From Amphiscolops sp. MND2022 (Eukaryota): a stretch of DNA of 64,000 bases. The first letter of the stretch is position 1; every line of letters begins with the position of its first letter. Shown here in pieces: positions 706-22,648 of the stretch. Where the stretch lies: assembly GCA_964187785.1 (NCBI GenBank), contig OZ076412.1, forward strand, positions 57,722,001-57,786,000. The letters run 5' to 3'. The position numbers and the translations under genes were made by a program. Under the pieces are notes generated by a model, which saw only the letters and a program-made list of their open reading frames with translations, was not told where the DNA came from and ran no database searches.

Positions 706-1525
706 GTAATAGCTAGCGGTATGAATGTTAAAAAGAGAGTGTGAGTGTAACTGAATGTTAATTCTCTCAGACTTTAATGGTGGTTTTTCATAGGTTTCTT
801 GAACACTGTGTTTTGTTAGCAGGTACTTGTCTAAGTGACAAAGTGACAGCTGCTCTTTTAGCGGAATCTACCACAGTTATGCAGGTTTCATTAAGAAGCC
901 GTTCTAATTTTGAAAGCAACTGAGCCCTAGCCGAGATTGTCTGAACTTTTTACATGCTGCATGGAAACATACAGGCTAATTTTTTTATAAAACTTGGAAG
1001 CCAAAGAAAACAAAGTATGGCTTTTGGGTTAACTATTTTACACGCAATATATTTGAAAAAATTCGCAGTTATTCTTAATCTTGTATAAGACAAGTTTTGA
1101 CTAATGAATCTCTCATGTTTACCACATTGATCAGAAGAATTCGCTGTGGGCAGCCTATGTGTATTCATTGAAACATTTGAACTTTGTAGAAGAAAATGAC
1201 TAAAACCATTTACTTTTCTTAAAAAGTCAAACAGTTGTTCAGAAGATTGTGGCGAATTCATAGAATATTCTATGTTTTCAACAGAGGTTCGAAAGTTTTG
1301 CTTAATACGGGAAGGATGTAGAGCTTCCGCTCAAAGGAAATCTATTTGGTATTTATCACAATTAGCGATCAAGACACAGTCAGTTGCAGCTTGTTTTCCA
1401 TTTCATTTCTTTACTGCGCGAAGTTTGTTGCGATTTGCATGCGTCATTGATATTTTGCATGGTCATGTATTGTGATTTATGAACGGAGATGTAGCATCAA
1501 TAACAGCCACGTAGCCTGGCTAACA
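705..1525 (-). mobile_element. Probable 5' LTR of the edge gypsy element (far boundary uncertain)
   Basis: Minus strand ends ...CTATTACA next to the PBS. Candidate start is TGTTAGCCAGGCT at 1525, preceded by purine-rich GGGAGAG. No second copy in the window to confirm it. Confidence 0.4.
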
Positions 1526-2068
1526 CTCTCCCAGAAGCTATTTTGTTCTGGGTAATTTCACAGAGGGTTGGAATTGTCAAACTGGTTTTAATCTTTGGCA
1601 ATATAATATACGTGTAACATACGAAGTTAGTCTAAATCACGCACGCTTAAGCGTCATTCAATTGAATGAGGTCCATTTTTTTGTGAAATACTTCATAAAT
1701 CAAAGGGAAAGGTTGAATGTACATGATGTAACGTGTTTAGTTGCGAGGACCAATTTGGCATTACGAGAGAAGACCAATTTCAAATGTTTCCCGAGAAGCC
1801 ATAACACTTCAAAAGACAAAAAGCAGTTCAGGGGTCTGATTTGTGGCACTAATTCATTCGAATTCCACATTGAGTTATGATACATTCTTTGCTATTCCTC
1901 TTCTTAATAATATCGAAATTCCGACCCTTATTTTTGTTACATGAGCAGCGCCTTGGTGAAAATCGCCATTCAATTATTAAAGAGCTACATTTAGCCTAGC
2001 AGTTACTGAAAGAAATTCACGACGTTATTTTTTCTAAACTTTCGCTACAAAGTGGACCAAGTTTACGA

Positions 2069-5000
2069 ATGGAAATGCCCATACGTCGTTCAACCTTCAT
2101 CACCCTTGTAAATTATTTTTTCTTGTATTTACTTATATTTATATTTTTATCAAATCTATCGAACGCAGCCACAGCTGAGAAAAATCTCCGTGCCAAACTT
2201 TTTACTGGCAACGACCGATGGGCCAGACCTGTGGCTCATGCCAAAGATGTTGTCAACGTCACCTTTGCGGCAGCCATTTACCAGGGATTATCTTGAACAC
2301 ATTTTCAGTCTTTACGGTAAACTGAAAAGGGTCTGAATGATTTTTAAAATTTTCACATTTTCATTCAGACTTCAGCTGAATAAAAAACCCAAAAAAAACG
2401 ACTCCTTCGAACACTTTTGGCACTGCAATTCTGAGTCTTTTTTGAAATCAGGTCCTTAAGATTCGAAATACAAAGAGCTTTGAGCGGTGTTTGATGTCCC
2501 CGGCTTTTGTTCTAACATCGTTTGGCATACTCTATTTTTATGCCCAAAAACACAGTAAGGTACCAAAAAATTACGAACTTCCAATTTTTTGTAGATTTCT
2601 CAATTTTTTAGCTATCAAAACTAATTTTTGTGAAAATCCATGGTCGGTGTTTGTTTCTCTAACTTTTCCTGATCCAGGCCCTCACTGTGGGTACTCTAAT
2701 GTATTAAACTTGAGTTCACCGCGCTGTTTTTTGCTGTATCAACCCTTAGTTTGATCATGATTGAAAAATTCTCCTATTTTTGTTGAAATGGTATGAAAAA
2801 CAAAGCAACACAGATAGCTCTAGCGTCCTCTGTTCCCCAACGCCAAAACAGTTAAAAAACGTTTCAAAAAAGAATTTTTCACCCTCGAACACTCGAAAAC
2901 CTAGGAATCTTGAATGACAGTTTAAATGATCAATTTTTAGCCGTTGCAAATTATCCTCAGCAAATTAGATTGAGTTACTTCTCAGCCGCTTCTGTAAGGA
3001 AACAAGGGCCTTTAAGTTGGTTTTGACAAGGTTGTCAGACCGAGCCGATGAAATTAAGAAAGTTCAATGCTAATCCTGGGAAGAATTTCTGCTAAATTCA
3101 AAAATTAACGGTAAAATTAGGTGCCATTTTGATGTTTGGAAGTAATGCAACGTTGAAGCTTTTCCAGAAAATGTACCAAAATGCATGCTACATCGAACCT
3201 TTTGTTCAAGTTTTATACATTACTTTGAACTTTTTCATAACGTAAAATCATAACCTGCGTTCGCATTGATAATGTCATAAGAAGTCAAGACAAAAACATT
3301 CCGGGTGCGCAGCGTACCTACAAAATGTACAGTAAATAGAAGAGAAAACCTTTTTTGCGTACCATAAATCACTTAAGCTTTCTCAAATGAAGAACGCAAT
3401 GCGGTCAGCGTAAATAATTCACGTAAAAAAAACAGGAAGTATCTTTTTTTGTACCCGTACTGAGATCCCATCGCAGTTCATCGATGGCCATCGCAGTCCC
3501 ATGGGGCCCATCGATGGCCATCAATGGTCCATCGATGGGCATCGATGAGGTTTTTCTAACGATGATCCCATCGATGGGAATCGAAGTTTTCCATCACAAA
3601 AATTCGTTCGACTTGGCCATGTTCAAAATTTCAACAAAACTCTGGCCATTTACGTTTTTCATTCAGTCTATTTAAACTTTGTTTGAGATTTCGAGGATGC
3701 CCAAATTATTTTATTCGGAAATGAAGTTATACATAGTGTAAGGACTACGGTCGTCTGTGTCTCTTAAATTACACGCGGACCGTGAGTCCTTTTTTGTAAT
3801 TTTAGATATAAACCCGTTAGTTCCTTCTGTATTATCCTGATTATTTGGTGACGAACCGGACTCAGTGTCCTTCTGTCCTGAAGACAGCGTACCCATAATA
3901 TTTTGTATCTCGGGGACCATTTTATCATTGATGGCAGAATTGATCGCTCTAGTTATCTGGACTTGTAGGAAGTTCATAAGTGAATCTGTCACTTGGGATA
4001 ACCTGAGATTCAATTCCTCTGATAACAGTTCCATAGACTCTAAGTGTCTATCTGACCTAGTGGTCTCAATTCTACAGCCAATGTTTCTATTCTCAATTTG
4101 CTGTGAAGGAATTTTGTAAGTAAGAATGGCCTCGGGGTCACCTCGGCCGAGAGAATGATTTAATACAATCTCGAATTTCTTTTCTATATAATTTGAATTG
4201 ATTCCACCAAGCATCATGTCCCTGTCGTTATCAATGGACATCGTGTCCATTTCTCTACAACGTCTAATTCAGTATTTTGTCTTCTTGTTGAAGAAAGTAT
4301 TTGTAGGGAAAGAAGTCAATTACTTCTTTTATGGTAAAATAAAGTGAGTTTGACAATCGGTCTCAATAATAGAGTTACAAATCAACATTGTGTCCTCGGG
4401 ACTAGGAGTCCCGAGTATTTATACTAAAATATGCATGACATACAAAATATAGGGTATCATCAATCTAATTTTAGAGCAAGTGCTCTAAAAATAGCTACAA
4501 AGGACTGCGTGTCCTTACAAACACACAATGACGTAGTTCTAAATATAGCAGCAACATGACGCAGTCAATATATATCTATATATAGTAACAGCGTCAACAA
4601 ATATCCACGTGGCCCTGAAGGCCGTCTAAATGGAACATGTTTAATAACACTACATGTAAAGCATCTTATATTAAACTGCATGTATAGCATGTGGAAATGA
4701 ATGGCAAGTAGACACAAGGGCCGTAACCTATAATAGACGACATAATACTGGCTATTCATGGGAATTAGTTTCCCGTCTGAGATAGCTTCAGAGAAGGGGG
4801 GAGGACTGAAAGTCCAGCATAATTTCGATGAATGAATTTCAACCACGAAAATGTATGTATGTATGTAGCAACAAATTGTTATAGGCCTTAAGGGCCGTAC
4901 AAAACTATTAATTGCATCTTTGTATAATATATTGCACTTTCATTTTTAAATTGGACTGGTAGTCCCACTGCCATAACACCGACAATACAAATAACTGCTA

Positions 5001-8000
5001 TACTAGATGGGAGTGTTCAGCAAGCGTACTGCGCTGTAATTGGTTAATATTTAACCGGACTAGTTGTCCACTAGCCATAAGTGAGAGGTTTATTTAGGTG
5101 GATAGGCGTGAAAGGTCTTTAAATGAAAGTTAACAGCGCTTAAAATCTAAATTGGGACTCAATTTCCAACTGCCGCAAACGTACTGGTTTATTAGTTGAC
5201 AAGCGGTGAACGGCCATCGCGTCCATTAATTAAAAGCACTAAATTAGAGCACTCATACTAATACTGCAATTTGATTGGTCTAAATTCAACCGGACTGGCT
5301 GTCCAAGACGACACAAAGGGACTCAAAACAAAATAAGATCACAGGTGGCAGCCTGCGACACTCCCCCTGGCATAAGGAGAAACGTTCCTGCTGACCCCAC
5401 ACTGACACGGTCCATGTGGTCGTCTTCATCGCTTGATAGATTACTGTGCCGTCCGACTTTGGTTATTAGGACAATAGGTCTCTCGAATGATGTCCGAAAC
5501 ACATTGCAATCCTTTTATATGCTGTAACGAGAATATTTTACATGTATAGAAGCAACAAACTATATAGCCTTCATGTCCACAACATTTTGCAACATCCATA
5601 ATACTTGTGACATGGTTACATAATAATCAGCATGAGTACAAAGGTGGTATTGGTTTATGACCATCATGTCCTTTAATACAGGTGAATGGATAAAATATCG
5701 GGTGGGGACTATTTTACTAATATCAGGGATTGGTGGACTGCCCTTGGCGTTAATGGCCAAGGGACATCAAGGACTGGTTTCAAAGCATCAATAAGCATTG
5801 ATTAAAATACATTTCAACTGCTTCATATTAGCTCAGGAATTGATAAATTAACAGCATCGCTTCAAAAAAAAAGGAAAGCCACAATGGCTGCCCGTCCTAT
5901 TATAACGTAACTAAATACTGCATGGCCTGCGTGGCCTTTAATTCTATTTACTGCGTACAATTAATAAGAGCACAGTGAATGGCGGCATGTGATTGGGTGA
6001 TTTATATTAAGGACCTGTGGTCCGCTACGCCAGGCTGTGTACATTGCATGGCCTCACTCGTCCATTTAACTTAATTGAGCAGGTACACGTATTTAATCAC
6101 AGCAACAATAATATAAAATATATAAGCGCTTCTGATTGATCAGTCTAAATTTGGACCTGTGGTCCACCACGCCAAGCCAAAAATCATTTAAACATTAATA
6201 ATACAGCGCTGGAAACAGTAGCAACATAGTTTTGTAATAATAAGGCCTTGTCGTCCAAGCACCAACTACTGCCTGGCTGTCTACGGCGTATGGCTGTACT
6301 CGGTTTTTCAGGAGATTCCGCTCACAGATTTTGATAAAATCCATAAGTTGACACGTATTTGACATCAAGTCCAAATAACTGTAAATTTGACAATAAATTG
6401 TATAGCCACGAACTCCAATTACTTTATCGACATTGTGTCAGTCTTTGTTACTTTGCCCATTTCTCCACTCAATTCAATATTTTTATTAATCATTCATATT
6501 ACTCAGAATTTAGCCAACGTCGCATTTAGTCTTCTTGTATTTGATCCACAGTCAGTCTTCTAGTCGGTTTTACTTGTGGTCTTCTTTTATATTATCTTCT
6601 TGGGACGTTCTGTGCAATCATCCTTACTCCCGTGGGTTACCTTGGGCTCGCCCCGGATAATCGACATCGAGTCCCCACTTAGCGGTTCTCTGTCAGTTCC
6701 CGTCTTATTCACCTTCTTTGGAAGAAAACACAGTCCTTTGCCTTGCTACTCTTAACTTGCCATCAGAGTGGACTCAAGGTCTCTTTGCCAACTTTCTCTT
6801 GGATTTGCGGACAACACTTTCAGCAGTGACACACAGTCAAATTGTTCTCTTCAGGAATCGCAACCAACAGTCCGAAATTTTCAATTTAGACGCAACAGCC
6901 ATCATTTTCCCAGCAGATATCCATATAGGTGTGTTGTTATGAAGGTTTTCTTTCATTAGTTTCGATTTTTGATTTTGAACTTGAAGAGGCTTGATCAAGG
7001 CCTTCATGTTGTTCAAGTAATTCCTGTCCATATAACACAAGTGTTCACTTGAGTTCGATTCTTTCTACTCCGGAGATTTTATATGCGGTAAATGGACTTT
7101 AATTAAGGAAGGTTCCCGCTTGAATTTATTTCGTTCTATTTAGACATGTCGTCTGAGAACAACTTGAAGAAAATCCAACACAACATTCTGAAAATAATGA
7201 TGTCCAGCAGTTCACTGGATTCCTGGTGACTGAAGATACTGCTGAGTCAAATAAGCGAATTGCTGAGCCAGTTTGCCGTCAAGCGGACATACTGACCCCT
7301 AGTCCATCAACTGAAGATAGTGTTAGCGCGTCATTCGGGGCTACAGAGTCTGTACAGGAAACTGAGCCAAGTTCATCTAAATCCTAAATGTACATAGTGT
7401 ACATTTGTTTCTAATTCATTTCTGTTGTATTTCAAACTGGTTTGTATTTGTTGTATTAATGTGCTTGCAGACTGTTTGTGGCTTTTATTGTATTATTCGC
7501 CACTGAGTCCATTTGTTGTTGTATTTGTCCGAAGATATAATTTGTGCATGAGAAGTCAAAAGATATAGTCAGAGCAGTCCCAAATAAAATACAAGTCCCA
7601 GTGGGCGAATAGAGAAAAGGAGACAAGCAATTTAATTTTCTGGCTAGTGATTGTATTCATGAGGATAGTTGGGGATGGGTTAGATTGAAGATTGTATTTT
7701 CTCCTCTGGGACTCGTATTTTCATCAATTTCTTCATTTTCCGATATTCCGGGCACGGTAATATCTGCGCCTCCGTTCGGAACAATTTCCGCATCGTCTAG
7801 TTCATTTGTGACGTTATATTCCTTTTCCGTCCTACTTGTCGATTTATTCGGTGGGGACGCCGCGTCACGGTTGTTGGCCGGTGTCGGCTGTATTTCATTC
7901 TCGGTGACGTCATTTTCACTCATTTTCTGGCTGCAGCGTTCATCTTCGTGTACGCTGCTGCGTTCAGTTTCAATGACGTAATGGTCCACACCGCCACTTG

Positions 8001-11000
8001 CGTCGTCGTTCAGCAGGCGTGTAGCCACGTCGGTCCAATTTTCTTTTCTCGGCTCAAATACTTTGAAATGAAAGTCTGATTCCCACAAAATTGTATACAA
8101 GTCGTTTTCTGTTCGTCGTGTAGACGTGTTCGGATCATTTTCATTATTTGTAAGTGGATAGTTTCGATAGTATTTGTAACTGGAAAAGACGTAATGTCGT
8201 TCTGACATGGGTTCATTCATTTGGAGTCGTGGCGCAGTTAGTTTTTTGAATTTGGCTTCTGAGAGATAATATGACCTGATGTGGCACTTGACTGTTTGTC
8301 ATTGATATAGGGGGACGCCTCGTCTCCTGGTCTGGGTGATGGTTTTGTTTTTGCTTTATTTCTCTTGGGGCGTAAATTCGCACCTGCGCCTTTCCAACAT
8401 TTTTCGGCTGTGTGGTTTGTTTTACTGCACGTTGGGCATTCAGGGTATGTTGGACGCTGGGGCTTTTTGTCACTTTTGTCCTCCACTTTCCGTTTCTTTT
8501 TCAGTTTTGGACAGTTTTTATAAAAATGGTTTGTCGCCTTGCAATATGCGCATTGAGCTGCTTTATTTGTGTCAAGGCTATTAGACAGCAAACTTTGAAA
8601 AATTTCAAGCATAGTAGTTTCTGGTGTGGGTGGCGTTGTGTCCATTAAGACATTATGGACCGATTCCTGTACTTCAAGGTTCGGGTCCGAGTGGATTCGT
8701 CCAGTCAGGAACTCAGGAATTGATCGCTGGGTGTCGTTAACTCCTGTCACCATGTAAGGACTACGGTCGTCTGTGTCTCTTAAATTACACGCGGACCGTG
8801 AGTCCTTTTTTGTAATTTTAGATATAAACCCGTTAGTTCCTTCTGTATTATCCTGATTATTTGGTGACGAACCGGACTCAGTGTCCTTCTGTCCTGAAGA
8901 CAGCGTACCCATAATATTTTGTATCTCGGGGACCATTTTATCATTGATGGCAGAATTGATCGCTCTAGTTATCTGGACTTGTAGGAAGTTCATAAGTGAA
9001 TCTGTCACTTGGGATAACCTGAGATTCAATTCCTCTGATAACAGTTCCATAGACTCTAAGTGTCTATCTGACCTAGTGGTCTCAATTCTACAGCCAATGT
9101 TTCTATTCTCAATTTGCTGTGAAGGAATTTTGTAAGTAAGAATGGCCTCGGGGTCACCTCGGCCGAGAGAATGATTTAATACAATCTCGAATTTCTTTTC
9201 TATATAATTTGAATTGATTCCACCAAGCATCATGTCCCTGTCGTTATCAATGGACATCGTGTCCATTTCTCTAGAACGTCTAATTCAGTATTTTGTCTTC
9301 TTGTTGAAGAAAGTATTTGTAGGGAAAGAAGTCAATTACTTCTTTTATGGTAAAATAAAGTGAGTTTGACAATCGGTCTCAATAATAGAGTTACAAATCA
9401 ACATTGTGTCCTCGGGGCTAGGAGTCCCGAGTATTTATACTAAAATATGCATGACATACAAAATATAGGGTATCATCAATCTAATTTTAGAGCAAGTGCT
9501 CTAAAAATAGCTACAAAGGACTGCGTGTCCTTACAAACACACAATGACGTAGTTCTAAATATAGCAGCAACATGACGCAGTCAATATATATCTATATATA
9601 GTAACAGCGTCAACAAATATCCACGTGGCCCTGAAGGCCGTCTAAATGGAACATGTTTAATAACACTACATGTAAAGCATCTTATATTAAACTGCATGTA
9701 TAGCATGTGGAAATGAATGGCAAGTAGACACAAGGGCCGTAACCTATAATAGACGACATAATACTGGCTATTCATGGGAATTAGTTTCCCGTCTGAGATA
9801 GCTTCAGAGAAGGGGGGAGGACTGAAAGTCCAGCATAATTTCGATGAATGAATTTCAACCACGAAAATGTATGTATGTATGTAGCAACAAATTGTTATAG
9901 GCCTTAAGGGCCGTACAAAACTATTAATTGCATCTTTGTATAATATATTGCGCTTTCATTTTTAAATTGGACTGGTAGTCCCACTGCCATAACACCGACA
10001 ATACAAATAACTGCTATACTAGATGGGAGTGTTCAGCAAGCGTACTGCGCTGTAATTGGTTAATATTTAACCGGACTAGTTGTCCACTAGCCATAAGTGA
10101 GAGGTTTATTTAGGTGGATAGGCGTGAAAGGTCTTTAAATGAAAGTTAACAGCGCTTAAAATCTAAATTGGGACTCAATGTCCAACTGCCGCAAACGTAC
10201 TGGTTTATTAGTTGACAAGCGGTGAACGGCCATCGCGTCCATTAATTAAAAGCACTAAATTAGAGCACTCATACTAATACTGCAATTTGATTGGTCTAAA
10301 TTCAACCGGACTGGCTGTCCAAGACGACACAAAGGGACTCAAAATAAAATAAGATCACATGTGGCAGCCTGCGACACATAGTTATCCATATTATTTACTT
10401 TTGCCAGGTTTTCCTTTTTTTTCAAACAATTCAAGGACAAGGCTCCGAAATAAGTGACTTTCAGGCTCGAGAAAGCTTACTCAGGCTCAACAGGAAATGA
10501 GAGTAGGTTAAAATTAGATATATTTAACCCTAAAATGCTCCACAAGTGCCCCCATGCGCTGGGCGATAATTCAAATCCCATCGATGCCCATCGGAAAAAG
10601 TTCCCCGTCGGTGGGATTGAATGGAGTCTCAGTACGGTGTACAAAAAACTGCGCCAGCCCAAAGACCCTGATTTAATCTTGAAGTTATTGAATTCTATCG
10701 CTCAACAAGCTGGTAGCAGCATAAATCGTACCTCAAAAAGCACAAACACTTCAAAGCGTCGAGCAATTTTTGAAAACTTTTCACCCTCAAAGTGCCAAAA
10801 AAACCCAAAAATTTTCTCACTGAAAACATCAAATTACCTAAGTGAAAACCCTTTTTTCAGAAAACCTTTTTTGTATAACCAAAATTATCAACAAAACCAG
10901 AGGAGGACACATTCGCCTTATTTTCAAAACCGTAGATTTTTTTGTAGATTTTGCATTTGCAAAAATATATTCACTGTGTATAAACACATTGTTAGGAGCA

Positions 11001-14000
11001 TTGTTGTGTGCTGCCTTAAAATGACCAATGTTTAATATAGATTTCACAAAATTCTTTCATTTTGGACAAAACATAACGTACAAATTTTTGCTGATATGGC
11101 AAATCTTAAATGATCATACGTTAGAAAGCCAAAACAAAGTTCTCTCAAATAGCATCAAGCTACAGGGTGATATGTGCCTTTGTCACACTGCGCAGTTAAC
11201 CTAAATAGCCACGTCTCTGAAATGTGCGAAAATAGGTGCCTCTCTTATTTTTCACACTGAATGATGACAGTGTCCACTTCCGTTTTTCCCGGTCTTCAAT
11301 TCAGAAAAAATGAGTAACAATCAAGCAACATGCATTCTGTGATAATCCTTGGTCTGGCTCAGATTGTAGACTTTGACGCCAAGGCTGAGACCCTCAGCAC
11401 ACTGATGTGGCCCCTGGTTTGCTGGCATGACATCAACATCCATTGGGACCCCACACAGAACGATGGTACTCTTAGTGGAGACAGTATTCACTATTTTTCT
11501 ATTACAAAATCTCGAATAAAATTCAACTAAAAGATGGCAAAAAGAGATACATGTGAAGTTTTTGCAAATTTGACAACGTAAACGTTCGTCAAGAAGGTAC
11601 GAAGGTTCTTTTTTTATTGTATTTTATCGTAATGATTTCGTTTTAAAAACAAGTGACAACTTTTCAAAATGAGCAGGTCTAGTTCTCTTTTGATATTTCC
11701 GAACTGGCTCTAACCATCCATCAATAACAATATCAAATTTAGAAAGTGACGCTTCCTGAATAGATTTTTCTAATAACTACAATCATACATTTGTGTTAAT
11801 ACTTGTCCAACGTCAATGGAATATTAAAATATATATTCCGGAAACACAAATACATTCGAACAAAAAATAAGTATTTTTACTCATTGTCAATTTGATAAAA
11901 TACAATATAGGTTTCTTACATCCTATGTACAGCTAGCTAGTGCGCAATTATCTCCATTGAAGATCATTTCCATTGCAACAAAAAAATTTGAGATGCTCAA
12001 AGTTTTTTCCGATAATGTATGTTCCTATAAAAACCTTTCTTGACATATGGTTTTTGTATTTGCAGGTGGTTTCAAAAAATTGTTCTCATTACAATTCAAA
12101 GACGAATCTAATAGCCCTAGGTTACAAGAGTCACAAATCTTGCAAAATTCTTCCGAAATTCTCGTCAACTTTGCATTTCTCAAAAGAATCTTACAAATTT
12201 GTACAAGAATCGCAAATTTTGCAAAATTGTTACAACGTCGAACATTTTTTACAAGATTCTGATAACATTTTTGCAAAAAATGCATTTTTTTCGTGAAATT
12301 CTTACGAAAAATGTGATGTGTTATTTCGACCAAAATTTCAAAAATCATCAAGTAGCAACAACAGCCACAGTTGCCGTTTACAATGCACAAACTGTCCCAG
12401 GATCCCAGCAAAGGGCCCAAATTGTTAATTTTGAGCTAGAAGAATTTACATGCAATTTTACCCCAAAAATTACTATGAAGTATACCAGCTATGAAACTCC
12501 GGACAAAAATTCCGAGAACTCTTCTGCTAATGATGATAGGAATATGAACATGGTACCAAATGAAAATACATTTCAAGGGATTTACAAGGGTTCTAACGCA
12601 AACCTGCTGTCATCTGCTGTGATGGAGAAAATCAGTACAAAGACGAAACCACCTGAGCAATGTCATATTGAAAACTGTAAAAACCCTGAAAATTGTAGCA
12701 AAATCAACCATCGTTTTCATTTCTTCTCCAGCCCATTTCAGCTAGTCAGGAGACTGTTGAGAATGGAAGATATTGCTCCCTTAGGGGCAATGACACCACG
12801 CTAGGGCTGTAATGTTGTAAGCGAAAGCTTTACAACAATAACATCAAAAAATGCTCATGATACAAATAAGGCATTCCGATAATTTAAGATCTAGATGCTC
12901 TAATATGGGCAATTGTATCATTTTTCGCTTACAGATCGTTTTCTTTTGCAGCCGTTTAATTTTTTGAGGCAGGAAATGCAAAAAAATGTCAGATTTATGC
13001 ATTTTTTGTAACATTCTGAGAGCAGAAATATGCAAATCTTGCAAGATTTTTGCAAGAGTTAGATTCAAAAATTGCATTTTCTTACAAGATCTTACAAGAA
13101 TTCTTGTAAGAATTTTGCAAGAGTTGTGATTTTTGTAACTCAGGGAGACTACGGGCTGTTGTTCGTCACTCATTTCAAAGATGAAAAAGTGATTTGTTGT
13201 TTAAAAAATGCTTTGATAGAGTCTCGTTTGTAGTTATTTCTCACAAATTTATCACAAAAAAGGCTCAAGTAGCTTTATAGTCAATCAAATGTCGGTCAGC
13301 CGTTCAATTCAAGAACTCAATACCAGTAATGAGCGGATCTGTATCAGTTTTAGTTTGACCAAAATTTATAATGCATTTAAACGCGTCCTGTTGAACAATG
13401 GGCCAATTTCACCTCAAACTTTAATGTAGCACAAAACAGCCGACTTGAACGAAATACGAAAAAGTGAGGCTTAGCCCCCAAATCAGGAGTTGAAATATTC
13501 GGTATAGCACAATACACAATGTTGCATTTTCTTTCAAACATTGCTACATTATTTGCGTATTTAATTTTTTCCTTAGTGCTTATTAGTTTTGATCAATACA
13601 CGCACTTGATGCGTAAAGAAACGGTCGACTGTTTTGTACTGTATTCAAAATCGCATATTTTGTTCCGTTTTGAAAATTGTCCCGCTCTCCTTAATCACTG
13701 TTTTAAAAAAGATAAATCGTTTGCAACATTATAAACTTGCATGCAATCTCTCTAGGTGTTGACGTCATCAGAATAAACCAGAATGAAATCTGGATACCTG
13801 ACTTGATTCCCTACAATGATGTGGGTAGCTGGGACACAGAGAAGTACAAAAACCTGATCCCTTTGTTTGCCAGACACGATGGCAAAGTTTGCTGGATGTT
13901 CCCAACTATCATGGAGACCATCTGCACAATGGACGTGTATGATTTTCCCTACGACATGCAAAGGTGTCAGGTCAGAGACCGGTCATGACTAAGTGACGTC

Positions 14001-16999
14001 ACACTGAAAATTTATGCCAAAATTGAGTTATTTGATTTTAAAAATACTTGATTTGTGTAGCTTGGGTTTTTTTAAATAAATTCAAAGCAGTAAATTAAAT
14101 TTGAAGCGGGAATTTTCCACAAAACATAGAAAAATTTTTGAACAAAATCAGACAATCTCGAAAGATGTAAAATACGTCTCTGCCTTTTATGACATGCCAT
14201 AACAGCGCTCTCAACTAAAAAATCAGAGTTGTCACAAGAAAGCATAAATTCTAAAGCAATTATTTTTTGCATTTTTCGAAATCCATTTCAAAAGCAAATG
14301 AATCGAAGTCGATTTGTTTTTCTAATTAGTTTTATCGAAAAATAACACTGTTTCATGAACAATGTCCGGACTTTTTGTCGATGGTTTTCAGGTGCAACTG
14401 GGATCTTGGCAGTACAGCACGGCTGAAGTCCAAACCAGGTGTCTCCACCATGATCTCGACATGAGTGCCTTCACACCAAACTCACACTGGCAACTCACAA
14501 GTAGGAACACTTTTTCATTTCCGGCCTCAATTACAAAGACTTACAAAAAGCATGACCAGACTTTTCAGTCCACCAAAAGATACATTAATATTAAATTTAA
14601 AATAGTGACAATAGAGACAACGAAAAAGAAAAATGAGAGTTCTGGTATGATTCACATGTTAATATAGTCGCCTTGTTTCTCGAATATTTTGACTAATCGA
14701 GAATCTACCGACGACGTCAATTTTTTGATAAATTTTGGGGTAATTCAAGCATGCGCCTGCTTGATGGCGCTCCAGAGGTCATATTGGCACGAACACTGCT
14801 TGCATTCTGCGAAAACTTTGCATTTTATGATTGACCACATATTTTCTATTGGATACGTTGGGTAAAAAACCAGCTTCTAAAAAAATGGCAGCACTCGTGG
14901 AAATTTTCATTGTTTTCATTACAATTCTAAGTCGTCAAAATGATCGGTCACTATATGATTTTATTTTTCCAAGACGGTTGTTCTGGCGCACTTTTTAAAA
15001 ACTCACGTAAAAGTGTCGAAACACTCAAAGGGTACCTTTCGTGCTCAGAAAACGCCTGAAACGTTCAGATATAACTGGGAGTGCTTTTTCCGAACATTGG
15101 TTTCGTCAAAACTGGGATATAACGTGAAAACTTGGATATAGCGCACTAATTTTGATCCTCTGCTTTCTCTTTAGCAAAGTGCAATATACTTTGGATATAA
15201 CGTCAAAAGAGTGTCTTCGGATATGTCTTCGGATATAGTGTGCTGAAATAAATGGCTCAGCTTCCTCATTGGTAAAACGCAATATAGTTCGGAATACGTC
15301 ACAAATTCGGATTTAGCACAATATTTTTGAACCTCCACCTTGTCTTTAGTGAAACGCAATTTTCTTCGTATAAACGTCAAAAATTCGGATGGTATTTAAA
15401 AATATTATCGGTGGATATACACGTGGAGAAAACCTAATATCAGACGGAACATGAGAGTTTCGAAGAGTCTCATAGTGCCGAAATGGGGGCCCTTTGGTGT
15501 TTTTTAAAAATCTATTCCGTTGCAAAATGTCCCAAAAATTGAAAGGGGGACCTTCTGGAGACTTTCAAAAATATTCCAATAGAGTCTCTGTGCCAGACCC
15601 TTTAGTCCTCGTTCGGTTTTGTATGTTACGTTTGAAAAGGAAAAATAAAAAGGGACCCTTCGAACTAACTTAGATGCGTTTCCGCTGGCTGGAATTGGCT
15701 GGTCCATTAGTTTAGTAGTTTTAGTAGTTTCTATAAAAAGTGTCCACTATGCGTACATTGATATCTGACGAAAAAAAACCTGAAATACACCGACTAAAGA
15801 AACTAGGCACTGTAACAGTTGCGTTCATTTTCTACTTAAATGATTATATGTAACAAAAAACCAAAGCGTCACCGTTTACCAAGTTTTGCTTTATTTAGGT
15901 TGTCTTCGACAACTTTTGGTGGAATTTGAAAGAATCACTCTCTTGTCATGAGACGTGAATAAGGAATTTTGACGTGCTAATTCAATGGTCCCCCTTTGGA
16001 ATATTTTATAGTCAGGAACAAAAATAGTTTTACAAGCCTGAAGCGCTTGGAGATTCTTAAACTGATGAATTTTTTCTCCGCAACTGTTTCTGTGCATGTT
16101 TTTAAGATTTCATTCATTGTGAGATCGAAGCAGGCGCCGACTTAAGCCAATCTCACTTATTTCCAATTGATTTCAATATATGTTGCTTCTTGATAAAAAC
16201 AGTAATGTATATTAATAACCTACATAAGTTGCAGCACCGAATATCAAATCTAAATAGCACTTTCGAAGTTTGTTTGTAAACAACTTCCTATCACGAACGT
16301 CTGTTGTTGTTTGGTCGGCGGTGATATGACAGTATGAAACTTTCATTTTTGAGATTGTGAGGCCAAGTCTGTTTAGGGTCGACTTGTGAAGAAAAAGAAG
16401 AGCTGTACTTTGACAGCAGGAAGTACAGTTTCGTTTACTTGAACATCGATTTACAAAGAATGGACAAGTTCTACGTTCAGAACCTCATCCTTCCAACTGG
16501 GATCCTCCTAGCTCTCAGCAGTCTCATATTTTTCCTGCCCTCGGAACTTTCAGACAGAATCGGATATGGGATAACTGTGACGTTGGCTCTTTGTGTTAAC
16601 CTCGTCATTGTGATCGACTTCATTCCCGAAACTTCTAGAACTATTCCCTCACTTTGCACTTACTTTTTAGTCAGTATTTGTCTCTCGGGATTCTCAATTC
16701 TTCTCTCAGCTGTTTCTCTAAACATGGCGTCATCACAAAATCAAAGCGAAGCGAACATCGTCAGCTTAAAACCAATTGAAGCGCATGAGAACGAATTGAA
16801 TGGCGACCAATGTAACGCGATATCTATTCCTTCTCGTTCAGCCAATGAGAGAACAAGCAGTCGCTCCAAACTTGGAAAACTTCTTCAGCACGTTGTACCG
16901 AAGCGAGTTCAAGACCCAATGAAATTTCTGGACAGAGCTGCCGGTTCAATTTACTTCGTGGCCACGACTTTGTACACAATCTACTTTTTGTGGAAGTAA
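2069..16999 (+). CDS. Cys-loop ligand-gated ion channel subunit (nAChR/5-HT3-like, non-alpha), 421 aa; exons 2069-2284, 11363-11465, 13756-13970, 14392-14500, 16377-16999
   Basis: Exons join in frame (1266 nt). Signal peptide, RPV motif, WxD (WHD), IWIPDL, Cys-loop CTMDVYDFPYDMQRC (C-x13-C), GSWQY, M1-M3 with DRIGYGITVTL and a C-terminal M4. Intron 1 needs a GG donor. Confidence 0.93.
3737..5360 (-). repeat. 3' LTR (1624 bp)
   Basis: Direct repeat of 8753-10376, preceded on the minus strand by the PPT. Confidence 0.95.
3777..6256. repeat. Array of GG(A/C)C-N5-G(T/G)CC dyads
   Basis: GGAC-N5-GTCC at 3777, 3858, 4236, 4399, 4502, 4803, 4953, 5057, 5292, 6011, 6153. GGCC variants at 4611, 4884, 5212, 5924, 6244. 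One-mismatch copies at 4710, 5155, 5469. Mirrored in the 5' LTR at +5016. Confidence 0.92.
7657..8220 (-). pseudogene. Low-complexity ORF downstream of gag, possibly the post-integrase tail of a deleted pol
   Basis: 187-aa acidic, N/T/E-rich ORF immediately after gag. No catalytic motifs. Confidence 0.4.
8238..9266 (-). CDS. Gag-like protein (342 aa) with two CCHC zinc knuckles; its first 514 nt lie inside the 5' LTR
   Basis: CAYCKATNHFYKNC and CPTCSKTNHTAEKC (CX2CX4HX4C). The ORF crosses the LTR/PBS junction at SPY-M-VTG. Confidence 0.88.
   Translation of the reverse strand: MDTMSIDNDRDMMLGGINSNYIEKKFEIVLNHSLGRGDPEAILTYKIPSQQIENRNIGCRIETTRSDRHLESMELLSEELNLRLSQVTDSLMNFLQVQITRAINSAINDKMVPEIQNIMGTLSSGQKDTESGSSPNNQDNTEGTNGFISKITKKDSRSACNLRDTDDRSPYMVTGVNDTQRSIPEFLTGRIHSDPNLEVQESVHNVLMDTTPPTPETTMLEIFQSLLSNSLDTNKAAQCAYCKATNHFYKNCPKLKKKRKVEDKSDKKPQRPTYPECPTCSKTNHTAEKCWKGAGANLRPKRNKAKTKPSPRPGDEASPYINDKQSSATSGHIISQKPNSKN
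8753..10376 (-). repeat. 5' LTR (1624 bp)
   Basis: Direct repeat of 3737-5360, followed on the minus strand by the PBS. Confidence 0.95.
12116..13146. mobile_element. Foldback/MITE-like element with long diverged terminal inverted repeats
   Basis: GGTTACAAGAGTCACAAATCTTGCAAAATTCTT at about 12120 mirrors AAGAATTTTGCAAGAGTTGTGATTTTTGTAAC at about 13108-13140. Arms of roughly 190 bp built from CTTGCAAGA-like subrepeats. No clear TSD. Confidence 0.6.
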
Positions 17000-18639: not shown

Positions 18640-21600
18640 TGTGTCATTCAGATGACTCATAATTTGATTGAATCAACTCATGCATCAAAAAGTCATGAAC
18701 AACCAATGAAACTATTGATTTGATTGGCATTTTGGAAGGATTTTTACTTGTTGCAGTGTGATTAGTTAACTTTTCGATGATTCATTAATCGCGGTAAATA
18801 GAAATTCAGAATTGTGTAACAACCCAATTATTGTTCAGATTTGAGAACAAAAAAGACTTTCGACAAATACCTGCAGCTTCTTCCCCAAGACGTTTTCCCC
18901 ATAGGCGGAACATTCAAATCACAGCATCATGGAAAAAACAGCAAGGGCGTTATCCCTCAGAAATTTCAAAAAAGCATGTATAAGGTATGAGAACTTCTTG
19001 TTAACTTTGATCCCGATTTTGAAAAGCACCAACCAAGAGATGTTCCAAGATGTGTCAAAAACATGGTTCAATGTCCAAAGTGCACATGAACGTTACATGT
19101 TAACAGTTAGTGATGATACATATGAAGCTGAAATTTTGTGGATAGACGAACCTGAATCCAATGAATTAAGATCGAAAAAATGCCAATTCGACAAGACTTT
19201 AAAGGAAAAGACATTGTCTCTAGAAAAAACGAACTTTGAAGAAAATGCTAAAAGAGTTGCCGAAAAGGAGGTAGATTTGAAATGGAATGAGCTTAGAGAA
19301 AGATGTCGCAAATTGAACGACAGATACAATATCGAACTGAATAGACTCAGCAACATTTGCCAATCTTCCGAAAACATTTCAGCGCCGAACGATAAAACTT
19401 TGAAAGCAGTAAAAGGCGACTTTCAAAAACAACTTAAAGAAAATACGGAGCTATCTGAGGCTCTTGCGGAAATAAAAGATTCGGGTGAACTAGAAAAATT
19501 GAACTGAAATGTTTTTACAAAAATCTCTAACAAATTTGATGTTATCTTCTACCAAGCGTCGAATTCTCTTCCGTGCCAAAGTGAGTGCGGTGGGGAGATG
19601 CAGTAGATGCAAAACGAGTGCTAACGCACATGGAAAAAAAATGAAATTTCCCAAGTTTAGCGGTAACTGTAGAGATTGGCCACAGTTCAAAAAAGACTTC
19701 GAAAAACAAGTTTCTTCTGTCATCGTGGATGAGTCAACTGTCTCATATGCCTTACGAAACGCGTTGACTGACAATGCGAAAAGTTTGGTCCGTAATATGA
19801 ACGACAATATCAAAGAAATGTGGACACGGTTAGATGAGAGGTATGACGATGAAGGCAAGATTGTAGAAATTGTTCTCAATGATATTAAACATTTCCGACC
19901 GATAAAAGAAAATGAAGAAAGGCGTCTCCTGGCTTTTATTTACATCATAGAGAAAGCAACTATGGAATTGAAATATCTAGGGCGGGAGCCTGAAATAAAA
20001 AACAGTACAATTATTTCAATAATTGAAGAAAAATTGCCTGACGACTTGAGAACAAAATGGATCGAAAGAATTTACGAGAAAGATAGTGCAATTGACAAAG
20101 GCGATAAGTTTCCCGGTTTTCTAAAATTTTTGTTGGAGAGGTAAATGGTAGTTGAGTATGACTTGAGTTTGTTGAAACGAAATAAAGAAGAAGTAAAGGC
20201 TAATGTTCCACTGAACCTGGTAGGAGATAGTGGACAAAAGCCAGCAACTCCAAAATGTTTTTTGCATCCTGGATCAGAACATCGGACAGATGAATGCAGA
20301 TTATTCCTGGACAAATCTGTTCGCGAGCGATCGAATCTAGTAAAAGGAAGAAGAGCGTGTTTTAATTGTCTCAATATTGGGCCCACATCACGAATATGTA
20401 AAAGCAGGAAGCAATGCCAGCAAAAGGAATGCGGGAGGAACCATCACACACTCTTGCATGATAGTCAATTTCAAAGAGCAACCCAACAGACTAACCTGTT
20501 TCCCTGCGAAGTGTATCATAGCAGGGGAAACGTGTTTGTTTGCAAATCATGCCAATAGAGATTATCACTCCTACCCAGTCGAAGAATATTCTTTCTCTTT
20601 GGGACTCAGCTTCTACAGTGTCTTTAATTTTGATCTCAGTCGCAAACACCTTGAAAATTCCAGGCAAAGCTGTTTCTATTGTGATGGAAACACTCGGCCA
20701 AACAAAAAGAAAGCAAACAAAACTGTTCAAAGTCAATATAGGAGATCGAGACGACAATCTCGTTCTCGTTGAAGCGTATGGTGTTGATCTAATATCGACT
20801 GAGGAATACAGTACAGAACCTCATCGAACAATTTTTCCGACGGAGTTTCAGAATCATCAGGACAAAAGGGAATTTATTTCAATACTTTTGGGTTTGAACG
20901 TTGTACAGTATCACCCTGTACCAGTAAAATGTTGTGGAAATTTTGTCTTGTTTGAAAATGCATTGAAAATGCTGACACTAAAAGAAATTGAAGAGGCATG
21001 GAATTTCATAGTCAAACACGAGCAGAAAGAACTTCAACAAAGTTTTGAAAGCGGAAAATTTGAACGTTTAGGTGCTTTTAAAAACGAGAAAGGTTTGATT
21101 ATGGCTGGCCGGAGGATCAATGAAGTTGTGCCATTATTACCAAAATCATCAAAATTTGTGAAGCTGGCAAAAAAAGAAGCACACCAACCTGGTCACCTAG
21201 GAGAATTAGCAACTGCAACAAAGTTCGTACGAAACTTTGGTCACCGAACCTGCTAAGAATTATAAAATCTGTTTTAAAGTTTTGCACTAGATGTAGACTT
21301 TACAACAAGGAAAGAGCTTCGCAACTTATGGGTTCTTCAACTGAGGAGCGACTAAATCCATCGTTGCCGTTTACTAACCTATGTATTGATTTGTTCGGAC
21401 CATACAACGTGAGGAGCAATTTGAAAAAGACTTCGCATTGTAAAATTTATGCGGCCATTTTCACTTGCCTTTTTTCTCGAGCAGTACATTTGGATATAGT
21501 AATGGATTACTCGAAAAAGGAGTTCCTGCAAACCTTCAGGAGATTTGTTTCACTTCGCGGATTTCCTGAAGTCATTCATTCTGACTCAGGCACTCAACTA

Positions 21601-22648
21601 GTTAGTGCCAACAAAGCACTTCAAGGCAGCTTCAAGATTATGAATGATGATTTCCTCTTTAAGGAATTAAACTTTAAAGGATTGCGGTGGGAATTTGCAC
21701 CCGGCTGTGCTCCATGGCGGCAAGCTTGCGCTGAACCGCTTATCAGCTCAGTAAAAAAATGCTTGTTTTTTGCTATTGGAAATCAAGTCCTATCGTTGAT
21801 GGAAATGCAAACAATATTGTTCGAGGTTGCAAACCTGATTGATCGACCCATTGGAAGACATCCGACTCACGCTGATGATGGGTTCTACTTGTCTCCCAAT
21901 TCTTTGCTACTCGGTCGTACTCAAAACCCAACTGTGCCGTTTCCAACAAACAATGGATATAATTTGACCCTTCAGAACCTAGTAGAAAATGATTTAGACA
22001 GCTTTTGGAAGAAATGGTAAAGAAATTTTTTGCCACAGATGTGTTTCTACTAAAAATAGCGTTAAACTCACAGGAACTTTGAAAAGGATGATGTAGTGTT
22101 AGTGGAAGATCAAAATACAATTAGACGTATTGGAAGTTAGGAAGGAGTCGAGACGTATATCCTGGACGCGATGGATTAGTGAGAGATGTTGAAGTTGAAA
22201 TTGTCGCAAAGAATGGAGTCAAGACTTGTTTGTCCAGGCCAACTTGTGTTGTTTCTTCCTAAAGACGAACAATGATTAACTGGAAAACATTAAACTTGAT
22301 ACGTTGAAGTTGATGAGTTAATTAAACTGTCAAACTGTCCACAGGAATTTGCTCAATCAGGCGATGTGGCGGGAGTGTGTCATTCAGATGACTCATAATT
22401 TGATTGAATCAACTCATACATCAAAAAGTCATGAACAACCAATGAAACTACTGATTTGATTGCCATTTTGGAAGGGTTTTTACTTGTTGCAGTGTGGTTA
22501 GTTAACTTTTCAATGATTCATTAATCGCGGTAAATAGAAAATCAGAATTTTGTAACAAATCAAATGTTGTTCAGATTTGAGAACAAAAAAGACTTTTGAC
22601 AAATACCTGCAGCTTATTCCCCAAGACGTTTTCCCCATAGGCGGAACA
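18640..22648 (+). mobile_element. Bel/Pao LTR retrotransposon, frameshifted, with RT/RNase H deleted
   Basis: 273-bp LTRs at 18640-18912 and 22376-22648 (TG...CA, about 14 differences), TSD ATAAA, PPT GTGGCGGGAG. Gag PKFSGNCRDWPQF (DUF1759-like), zinc knuckles CFLHPGSEHRTDEC and CFNCLNIGPTSRIC, protease LWDSAST, integrase IDLFGP...HSDSGTQL...QACAE. Confidence 0.93.

What the first reader, a model, noticed from the sequence alone, without database searches (positions are those of the whole stretch)
2280..11362. 9-kb GG-AG intron whose non-canonical donor is base-paired to the intron 3' end
Homology (IYQ|IVDFDAKAE, compare LIQIIDVDEKNQ in nAChRs) forces a phase-0 junction at 2284/11363, giving donor GG. 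No junction slide yields GT. The unusual +2 G pairs with a C in GATAATCC at 11341-11348, so it is supported by the stem and is less likely to be a base-call error. The stem also bridges a 6.6-kb antisense LTR insertion.
Basis: partly seen in the sequence, partly recalled or inferred. Interest (0 to 1): 0.72.

Follow-up and report, generated by a model that had tools for sequence, protein, structure and literature searches.

The report
Conserved GG-start intron with paired ends
An intact nicotinic-receptor-like ion-channel gene of an unidentified invertebrate can only be read if a 9-kb intron starting with GG instead of GT is removed; the GG, and a short helix joining the intron's two ends, recur in a sister gene and in another species, so the oddity is real and maintained, although no RNA data could confirm the splice.

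Summary
Exon 1 (2069-2284) ends IYQ and exon 2 (11363-11465) starts IVDFD. Seven homologues without an intron here read IYQ-IVDFD continuously, so the junction is 2284/11363 and the donor is GG. The other four exons give an intact 421-aa Cys-loop receptor, and introns 2-4 are GT-AG.

DNA contigs from two samples run unbroken through G2286, and no GT allele appears.

- **Stem:** it is longer than reported, 13 bp (2280-2292 with 11341-11353, one G.U). It covers the last 5 exon bases. P is about 0.001 against shuffles.
- **Tandem paralogue:** 95 kb upstream, the same site carries a GA-AG intron of 889 bp with the same two 8-mers, GGATTATC and GATAATCC. Synonymous sites between the two genes are saturated.
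- **Another species:** a homologue reads CAG|GGATTATC.
- **Insertion:** the 6.6-kb LTR element sits at 3737-10376.

The best reading is a real spliceosomal intron with a tolerated non-GT donor. It is probably descended from an inserted element with inverted ends, and the terminal helix is now conserved. No source repeat family was found.

No RNA runs exist for this organism, so splicing is inferred from conservation and not observed. Earlier notes of this scan report similar GG/GA/GC introns with paired ends elsewhere in this genome.

The parts
2069..2284 (+). Exon 1 of a Cys-loop (nicotinic-receptor-like) gene: signal peptide and first beta strand, ending ...VVNVTFAAAIYQ
   Evidence: Translation. 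It aligns with the paralogues. The last 9 codons differ from the paralogue only at synonymous third positions.
2285..2286 (+). Non-canonical GG donor dinucleotide
   Evidence: Confirmed in DNA contigs of two samples, with no alternative letter. The same GG occurs in homologue L024; the tandem paralogue has GA.
2280..2292 (+). 5' arm of the terminal helix (ACCAG|GGATTATC); the core GGATTATC is conserved in the paralogue and in L024
2285..11362 (+). Intron 1 (9078 nt, GG-AG, phase 0)
   Evidence: Junction fixed by homology. Outside the inserted repeats the ends are unique in the genome.
3737..10376 (-). Young LTR retrotransposon inserted in intron 1. LTRs lie at 3737-5360 and 8753-10376 and are 99.6% identical. 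The 5-bp target duplication CATAG lies at 3732-3736 and 10377-10381.
   Evidence: The ORFs of 179-342 aa lie on the minus strand and have no Pfam hit.
11341..11353 (+). 3' arm of the terminal helix (GATAATCCTTGGT), ending 9 nt before the acceptor. The core GATAATCC is conserved in the paralogue. It may contain the branch site (inference).
11361..11362 (+). Canonical AG acceptor (…GGCTCAG|ATT)
11363..11465 (+). Exon 2 (IVDFDAKAETLSTLMWPLVCWHDINIHWDPTQND-G), donor G|GTACTC
13756..13970 (+). Exon 3 (Cys-loop region), acceptor CTCTAG|, donor CAG|GTCAGA
14392..14500 (+). Exon 4, acceptor TTTTCAG|, donor CAA|GTAGGA
16377..16999 (+). Exon 5 (TM1-TM4, stop at 16997-16999), acceptor TGTTTAG|
   Evidence: It matches PF02932-type proteins.

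Best explanation
This is a genuine spliceosomal intron, most likely U2-type, in a functional Cys-loop receptor gene. Its 5' splice site is CAG|GG rather than CAG|GT.

Shown:
- The junction and the G at +2.
- An intact five-exon reading frame.
- Purifying selection on the gene, including the last codons of exon 1.
- An intron at the same site in the tandem paralogue (GA-AG) and in a homologue of another species (GG).
- Conservation of GGATTATC at the intron's start and its exact complement GATAATCC 14-18 nt before the acceptor, while the rest of the intron has diverged beyond alignment.

Inferred:
- The spliceosome of this lineage tolerates G or A at +2.
- The two conserved 8-mers pair in the pre-mRNA. 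In this gene the pairing extends to 13 bp, including the last 5 exon bases. It loops out the intron, now 9 kb after an LTR insertion, and holds the weak donor next to the branch/acceptor region. This would compensate for poor U1 recognition until helicases open the helix.
- The helix and the 3-nt CAG repeat at both borders are the remains of an element with inverted ends that inserted into a formerly continuous exon.
For: - **Junction and frame.** Paralogue and cross-species alignments force IYQ|IVDFD. The spliced CDS is 421 aa without a stop, and introns 2-4 are GT-AG.
- **Base call.** G2286 lies in unbroken DNA contigs of two samples.
- **Paralogue.** It reads ..TACCAG|GAAAGGATTATCC ... AGATAATCCTCGATCAACTGCTGTCAG|ATT and encodes an intact 420 aa.
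- **Other species.** L024 reads ..TACCAG|GGATTATCAAAT. Beyond the 8-mer its intron aligns only loosely with the window's, mostly within the first ~40 nt.
- **Selection.** pN is 0.14-0.22 against pS of about 0.8, which is saturated. The five differences in the last 9 codons of exon 1 between window and paralogue are all synonymous.
- **Helix.** 13 bp, P=0.001; the paralogue has 9 bp, P=0.07. Pair probabilities are 0.86-1.0.
- **Lineage-specific position.** Eight homologues in two species lack the intron: L001-L005, L022, L023, L048.
- **Local frequency.** Non-GT donors make up 3 of the 11 introns I mapped in three genes of this family.
Against: - **No RNA.** The only public runs holding this stretch are DNA, and the spliced junction was not found in JGI metagenome contigs.
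- **No covariation.** The helix core is invariant, so pairing is supported only by the complementarity of two conserved blocks.
- **The helix covers the 5' splice site** and would have to be opened for U1/U6 to bind.
- **U1 is unchanged.** U1 snRNA has the canonical 5' end ATACTTACCTG, so the tolerance is not explained by an altered U1 sequence.
- **Stems do not track non-GT donors.** They are absent from the GC-AG intron 2 of the paralogue (7 bp, not significant) and present in a GT-AG intron (16 bp).
- **No source repeat family.** The intron ends are unique in the genome, and the 15-fold excess of CAGGGATTATC comes mainly from three unrelated repeat families that carry it internally.
Confidence: 0.6

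Rival explanations
1. The intron is real and spliced at GG, but the helix does nothing. The spliceosome of this lineage simply tolerates non-GT donors, and the complementary ends are a decaying relic of the inverted ends of the inserted element, or chance.
For: Terminal helices also occur on a GT-AG intron (par_i5, 16 bp), and none is found on the GC-AG intron of the paralogue. GG/GA donors without any structural requirement make up about 12% of introns in the copepod Eurytemora affinis (PMC5714493). Earlier notes of this scan (s1-193540) reached this reading for other genes.
Against: The two 8-mers are unchanged between genes whose synonymous sites are saturated. They are also unchanged between species whose intron sequence is otherwise only loosely alignable. 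A neutral relic should have decayed like its surroundings.
Confidence: 0.25
2. The two conserved 8-mers are DNA elements, not RNA arms. WGATAATCC combines a GATA-type and a TAATCC homeodomain-type site, and it is the same double-stranded site in either orientation. It would be conserved as a transcriptional control element at both ends of the intron.
For: The motif reads (T/A)GATAATCC in 4 of the 5 copies. Conservation without covariation fits a protein-binding site equally well. That these are GATA and K50-homeodomain cores rests on my own knowledge and was not tested.
Against: It does not explain why the sites abut the splice sites, or why in this gene complementarity extends 5 more bases into the exon. 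No expression or binding data exist.
Confidence: 0.06
3. The gene is not productively spliced here. It would be a recently disabled or unspliced allele, or exon 1 would use the upstream in-frame GT at 2258 (AAC|GTCACC), deleting nine residues.
For: No RNA evidence exists. A GT lies at 2258 in phase 0. A young LTR element sits in the intron.
Against: The nine codons after 2258 are conserved as protein with only synonymous changes in the paralogue and L024. The non-GT state is shared by three genes or species that all keep open frames. pN/pS is far below 1. GTCACC is a poor donor.
Confidence: 0.05
4. The intron is removed by another machinery: the minor (U12) spliceosome, a tRNA-type endonuclease acting on a bulge-helix-bulge, or IRE1-type cleavage.
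For: The ends contain ATCC/TCCTT-like strings and a helix next to both cut sites.
Against: The U12 donor RTATCCTT and branch TCCTTAAC are not matched; the observed strings are GGATTATC and TCCTTGG. Any U12-like register breaks the frame, and in the paralogue by 7 nt. Cut site 1 lies inside a continuous 13-bp helix, and cut site 2 lies 9 nt outside it. This is neither bulge-helix-bulge geometry nor the CNG|NNGN loops of IRE1. These consensus comparisons rest on my own knowledge.
Confidence: 0.02

Closest known systems
GA and GG donor introns of the copepod Eurytemora affinis (Robertson 2017, PMC5714493); similar GA/GG/GC donors in the tunicate Oikopleura (my own knowledge)
   Same: Animal nuclear introns with G+1, a non-T at +2 and a normal AG acceptor, following an exonic AG. 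They were found in ion-channel genes by homology-forced junctions.
   Different: No terminal helix or conserved intron-end motif is described there. Here the same donor block and its complement are conserved across paralogues and species. This organism is not that copepod; its genome has 1.07 Gb with at least 13 large scaffolds.
Introner elements of the dinoflagellate Amoebophrya (PMC7789003)
   Same: Non-canonical introns with 8-20 nt inverted repeats pairing the 5' and 3' ends, plus 3-5 nt direct repeats overlapping the borders. Here the inverted repeat is 8-13 nt and the direct repeat is CAG. The hairpin is proposed to bring the exon borders together.
   Different: Those are repeated families in a protist with highly variable borders. 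This intron is single-copy, old, in an animal, and keeps G+1 and AG.
Transposon-generated introns (introners) of Micromonas/Aureococcus and other eukaryotes (PMC9860276, PMC12130899; Huff et al. 2016, my own knowledge)
   Same: The intron is specific to one lineage, sits in a formerly continuous exon, and has inverted ends and a short border repeat that could be a target-site duplication supplying the acceptor AG.
   Different: The defining multi-copy family was sought here and not found. Those introners use GT-AG.
Intron-end pairing that shortens the donor-to-branch distance in yeast introns, and nonconventional introns of Euglena (PMC12501133; my own knowledge)
   Same: Complementary segments near the donor and near the branch/acceptor loop out the intron.
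   Different: The yeast stems lie downstream of a canonical GT and do not cover it. Euglena introns lack both GT and AG, and their machinery is unknown.

Membership tests
Cys-loop ligand-gated ion channel gene (PF02931 + PF02932) | Ligand-binding domain with the Cys-loop, followed by four transmembrane helices in one open frame | tested here: met
   PF02931 matches at window 13755-14087. The spliced 421-aa protein has a CxxxxxxxxxxxxxC loop and TM1-TM4. The homologues' ORFs carry PF02931 and PF02932.
Spliceosomal intron with non-canonical GG donor | Intron position forced by collinear homologues, with no GT available in any register | tested here: met
   Slides give GG..CA, AG..TC or CA..CT.
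Spliceosomal intron with non-canonical GG donor | The donor base is real and not an assembly error or rare allele | tested here: met
   Unbroken DNA contigs in two samples. The same GG occurs in L024 of another species.
Spliceosomal intron with non-canonical GG donor | The spliced junction is observed in RNA | not testable with these tools
   Only four runs hold the stretch, and all carry the intron contiguous with the exon. No annotated or transcript-derived protein of this gene is in the protein collections.
Spliceosomal intron with non-canonical GG donor | The host gene is maintained by selection while carrying the intron | tested here: met
   Window, paralogue and L022 have intact ORFs, with pN 0.14-0.22 against saturated pS of about 0.8.
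Transposon-derived intron (introner) | Terminal inverted repeats at the intron ends | tested here: met
   13-bp helix, P=0.001; 9 bp in the paralogue.
Transposon-derived intron (introner) | Direct repeat or target-site duplication at the borders | tested here: inconclusive
   Only CAG is shared between the exon-1 end and the intron end. TTTACCAG against TGGCTCAG gives 4 of 8, and 3 of those are constrained by the acceptor.
Transposon-derived intron (introner) | Many similar copies elsewhere in the genome | tested here: not met
   The intron ends of the window and the paralogue are single-copy. Of 20 genomic copies of CAGGGATTATC inspected, 16 are internal to three unrelated repeat families. 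Only 2 elements share a longer end. No 30-60 nt spaced inverted pair exists.
Transposon-derived intron (introner) | Lineage-specific presence in an exon that is continuous in relatives | tested here: met
   Absent from L001-L005, L022, L023 and L048. Gain versus double loss is not resolved.
U12-type (minor spliceosome) intron | Donor RTATCCTT and branch TCCTTAAC 10-20 nt before the acceptor | tested here: not met
   The donor is GGATTATC or GAAAGGATTATCC, and the 3' region is ATCCTTGG or ATCCTCGAT. A U12-like register breaks the frame.

The most novel reading that the evidence does not exclude
In this animal lineage a class of introns is recognised mainly by base-pairing between their own two ends rather than by U1 pairing to a GT donor. 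The terminal helix defines the splice sites, which frees the +2 base to be G, A or C. That would be an animal counterpart of the structure-defined nonconventional introns of euglenids, and the helix would be kept by selection long after the founding insertion has decayed.
Probability: 0.15. Interest if true: 0.85.

Novelty: new variant of a known kind. Interest (0 to 1): 0.55.

Why it matters
GT at the start of introns is close to invariant in animals, and annotation pipelines assume it. Here a non-GT donor has been kept in two long-diverged paralogues and in a second species, together with a matching pair of intron-end motifs. This shows three things.

- Gene models in this genome will be wrong wherever GT is enforced.
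- Tolerance of G or A at +2 is an old property of the lineage, not a mutation in one gene.
- The locus is a compact natural test of whether intron-end pairing can stand in for donor recognition: the GG, GA and 13-bp or 9-bp helix variants could go into minigenes.

It also documents intron turnover inside a family whose other members have an uninterrupted ligand-binding exon.

Tried and rejected
- **RNA evidence.** The look-up of sequencing runs returned only four runs, all carrying the intron. The spliced junction and the donor motif were absent from JGI metagenome contigs. Protein searches found only ORF fragments from genomic contigs and no transcript-derived protein.
- **Source transposon family.**
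  - The paralogue's intron and the window's intron start are single-copy.
  - CAGGGATTATC is 15-fold enriched (1026 hits against 67 for the control). In 16 of 20 inspected copies it is internal to three repeat families.
  - A longer shared end occurs only twice, and no short inverted pair exists.
- **Tandem-duplication origin.** The intron start resembles the exon-2 start and the intron end resembles the exon-1 end. I saw this by eye only and did not test it statistically, so I make no claim.
- **Gene conversion between the paralogues.** This would explain the shared intron, but third-position identities per exon give no clear signal.
- **U12-type, bulge-helix-bulge and IRE1-type splicing.** Rejected on motif and geometry.
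- **Alternative GT donors.** Those at 2308 and 2317 lie behind an in-frame TGA. Those at 2249, 2252 and 2258 would delete residues that are conserved as protein.
- **Organism identity.** COX1 was found with TGA codons, but it cannot be named with these tools, and the Atlas search gave no taxon. Other agents of this scan guess an acoel worm; I did not test that.
Full report
**Observation**

The window holds a five-exon Cys-loop (nicotinic-receptor-like) gene: exons 2069-2284, 11363-11465, 13756-13970, 14392-14500 and 16377-16999. Joined, they give a 421-aa protein without a stop, with a signal peptide, a Cys-loop and four transmembrane helices. Pfam PF02931 matches the window in a six-frame search of the whole genome, which holds at least 150 such matches.

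Introns 2-4 are GT-AG. Intron 1 is not. Exon 1 ends ...ATT TAC CAG and is followed by GGATTATC. The intron ends ...GGCTCAG before ATT GTA GAC.

Five paralogues of the same genome (L001-L005), and two genes of another species (L022, L023), read ...(I/L)YQ(I/L)xxFD... without interruption. The junction must therefore lie between 2284 and 11363. The shared CAG allows slides of 1-3 nt, and none gives GT or AG.

GT donors downstream, at 2308 and 2317, lie behind an in-frame TGA. Those upstream, at 2249, 2252 and 2258, would remove residues that are conserved as protein. The nine codons after 2258 differ between this gene and its paralogue at five positions, all synonymous.

**The base is real**

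The only public runs holding the stretch are four DNA data sets from two samples. Their contigs run unbroken through 1500-3477 with no difference in the first sample. In the second sample they run through 1500-2436, with differences at 1702, 2390 and 2403 but none at 2285/2286. No GT allele is seen. Contigs can miss rare variants, so this is not a population survey.

**The stem**

GGATTATC (2285-2292) is the exact complement of GATAATCC (11341-11348). ACCAGGGATTATC (2280-2292) pairs with GATAATCCTTGGT (11341-11353), 13 bp with one G.U. It includes the last five exon bases and ends 9 nt before the acceptor.

A helix this long appears in 1 of 1000 dinucleotide shuffles of the 3' piece, and the duplex energy is -21.7 kcal/mol (z = -2.5). 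In a cofold of 140 nt from each end, every pair has probability 0.98 or more.

The helix spans an LTR retrotransposon at 3737-10376. Its LTRs are 1624 bp and 99.6% identical, and the target duplication is CATAG. The element's ORFs are on the minus strand and have no Pfam match.

**Comparative evidence**

The closest paralogue lies 95 kb upstream on the same chromosome. It has an 889-bp intron at exactly the same codon boundary. Its borders read ...ATTTACCAG|GAAAGGATTATCCAC... and ...AAAGATAATCCTCGATCAACTGCTGTCAG|ATTGTT. This is a GA-AG intron with the same two 8-mers, forming a 9-bp helix (P=0.07; pair probabilities 0.86-0.97).

That gene is also intact at 420 aa. Its introns are GA-AG, GC-AG (21 kb, displaced 12 nt from this gene's intron 2), GT-AG, GT-AG and an extra 29-kb GT-AG intron. 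The two genes are old: pS is about 0.8, which is saturated, and pN is 0.22. Their introns do not align except at the ends.

A 580-bp contig from another ENA sample (L024) encodes an exon 1 that is 39/42 identical in the mature part. It reads ...GTATACCAG|GGATTATCAAATAATTC. Third-codon positions there are only 53% identical. Beyond the 8-mer the intron aligns only loosely, mostly within the first ~40 nt.

The GG donor and its 8-mer are therefore conserved between species, and the non-GT state is shared by three genes. This excludes a private mutation or a dead allele, and it argues that the two 8-mers are under selection.

**History**

A second species (ENA ERZ26859043) has two genes of this clade, L022 and L048, both with an uninterrupted ligand-binding exon. 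L022 groups with the window gene (support 96/96), and a window+paralogue clade is rejected (AU p=0.014). So the duplication predates that species split.

Two histories remain. The intron may be older than the duplication and lost twice in the other species. Or it may have been gained or transferred in both paralogues later. I could not decide between them, and per-exon third-position identities show no clear gene conversion. Because all more distant paralogues lack the intron, it is in either case a gain within this clade.

**Origin**

The architecture is inverted ends plus a 3-nt CAG repeat at both borders, in a formerly continuous exon. This is the architecture of transposon-born introns, such as the Amoebophrya introner elements with 8-20 nt inverted repeats and 3-5 nt direct repeats (PMC7789003). 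The start CAGGG also resembles hAT-type ends (my own knowledge), a lead given by earlier notes of this scan.

I could not find a source family. The intron ends are single-copy. The 15-fold genomic excess of CAGGGATTATC is due mainly to three repeat families that carry it internally. Further pattern searches were negative.

The paralogue-only 29-kb GT-AG intron has a 16-bp terminal helix (P<0.001) and a TTCCAG/TTCCAAAG border repeat, and its ends are also unique. Terminal helices therefore mark lineage-specific introns here, whatever the donor.

**Mechanism**

The intron is most likely removed by the major spliceosome. It has G+1, AG, an exonic CAG before the donor, and a plausible branch region (GATAAT) 17-21 nt before the acceptor. 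U1 snRNA has the canonical 5' end ATACTTACCTG, so G at +2 is a mismatch that must be tolerated, as in Eurytemora affinis, where GA and GG donors make up about 12% of introns (PMC5714493).

In my small sample, 3 of 11 introns in three genes of this family are non-GT. I infer that the conserved helix holds the weak donor next to the branch/acceptor region across the long intron, and is then opened. This step is not shown. There is no covariation, and the helix covers the donor itself, which could equally inhibit splicing.

The rivals are a functionless relic, a DNA-level protein-binding site, and no productive splicing; they are scored in their own section. U12-type, tRNA-endonuclease-type and IRE1-type mechanisms do not fit the motifs or the geometry.

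**Verdict**

This is a new variant of known phenomena: non-GT donors in a few animal lineages, and introns with paired ends born from insertions.

Earlier notes of this scan describe the same phenomenon elsewhere in this genome (s1-193562, s1-191874, s1-193540, s1-184706, s1-151678). This locus adds long-term conservation across paralogues and species. RNA evidence is the missing piece.

Noticed in passing
C4:57653326-57682285 (L013:6326 to L017:5285), tandem paralogue: A paralogue-only 29-kb GT-AG intron splits TM3. Its ends form a 16-bp helix (AGAGACGAAAGTAATG / TGTTACTTTCGTTTTT, P<0.001), and its borders repeat TTCCAG / TTCCAAAG like a target-site duplication. Both ends are single-copy in the genome.
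   Followed up: partly
C4:57630309-57651543 (paralogue intron 2) versus window 11466-13755: Intron 2 of the paralogue is GC-AG (CCAG|GCATGC) and lies 12 nt (4 codons) upstream of this gene's GT-AG intron 2. Both are phase 1. This means either intron sliding or independent gains.
   Followed up: partly
window 13963-13975 and 14380-14396; paralogue equivalents: Intron 3 is shared by both paralogues and absent in the other species. The exon end GGTGTCAG and the intron end GGTTTTCAG are near-identical, which looks like an 8-bp target-site duplication.
   Followed up: no
C4:57625671 (about 3.4 kb upstream of the paralogue's exon 1): The paralogue's promoter region and the first ~100 nt of its exon 1 (MHLFSSTFASSFSFTVISCLLFMK...) are duplicated in tandem upstream of the real exon 1.
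   Followed up: no
genome-wide; e.g. C1:4747328(-)/4761807(+), C1:30801085(-)/30815626(+): CAGGGATTATC occurs 1026 times against 67 for the reversed control. Many copies come as inverted pairs about 14.0-14.6 kb apart with identical flanks, which suggests a family of ~14.5-kb elements with long inverted ends.
   Followed up: partly
window 18929-22020: A BEL/Pao-like retroelement is present: DUF1759/gag-like (19509-20144) and integrase core (21328-22020), on the plus strand downstream of the receptor gene.
   Followed up: partly
window 3443-3500: Word depth in the DNA runs jumps about 2000-fold at ~3452, and many contigs end there. This marks the boundary of a very high-copy repeat just upstream of the LTR element.
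   Followed up: no
window 11330-11527: The frame of exon 2 is open from an ATG 33 nt upstream of the acceptor (MHSVIILGLAQ-IVDFD...). The intronic ILGLAQ resembles the xLxLxQ end of exon 1. I did not test whether this is chance or a remnant of duplication.
   Followed up: no
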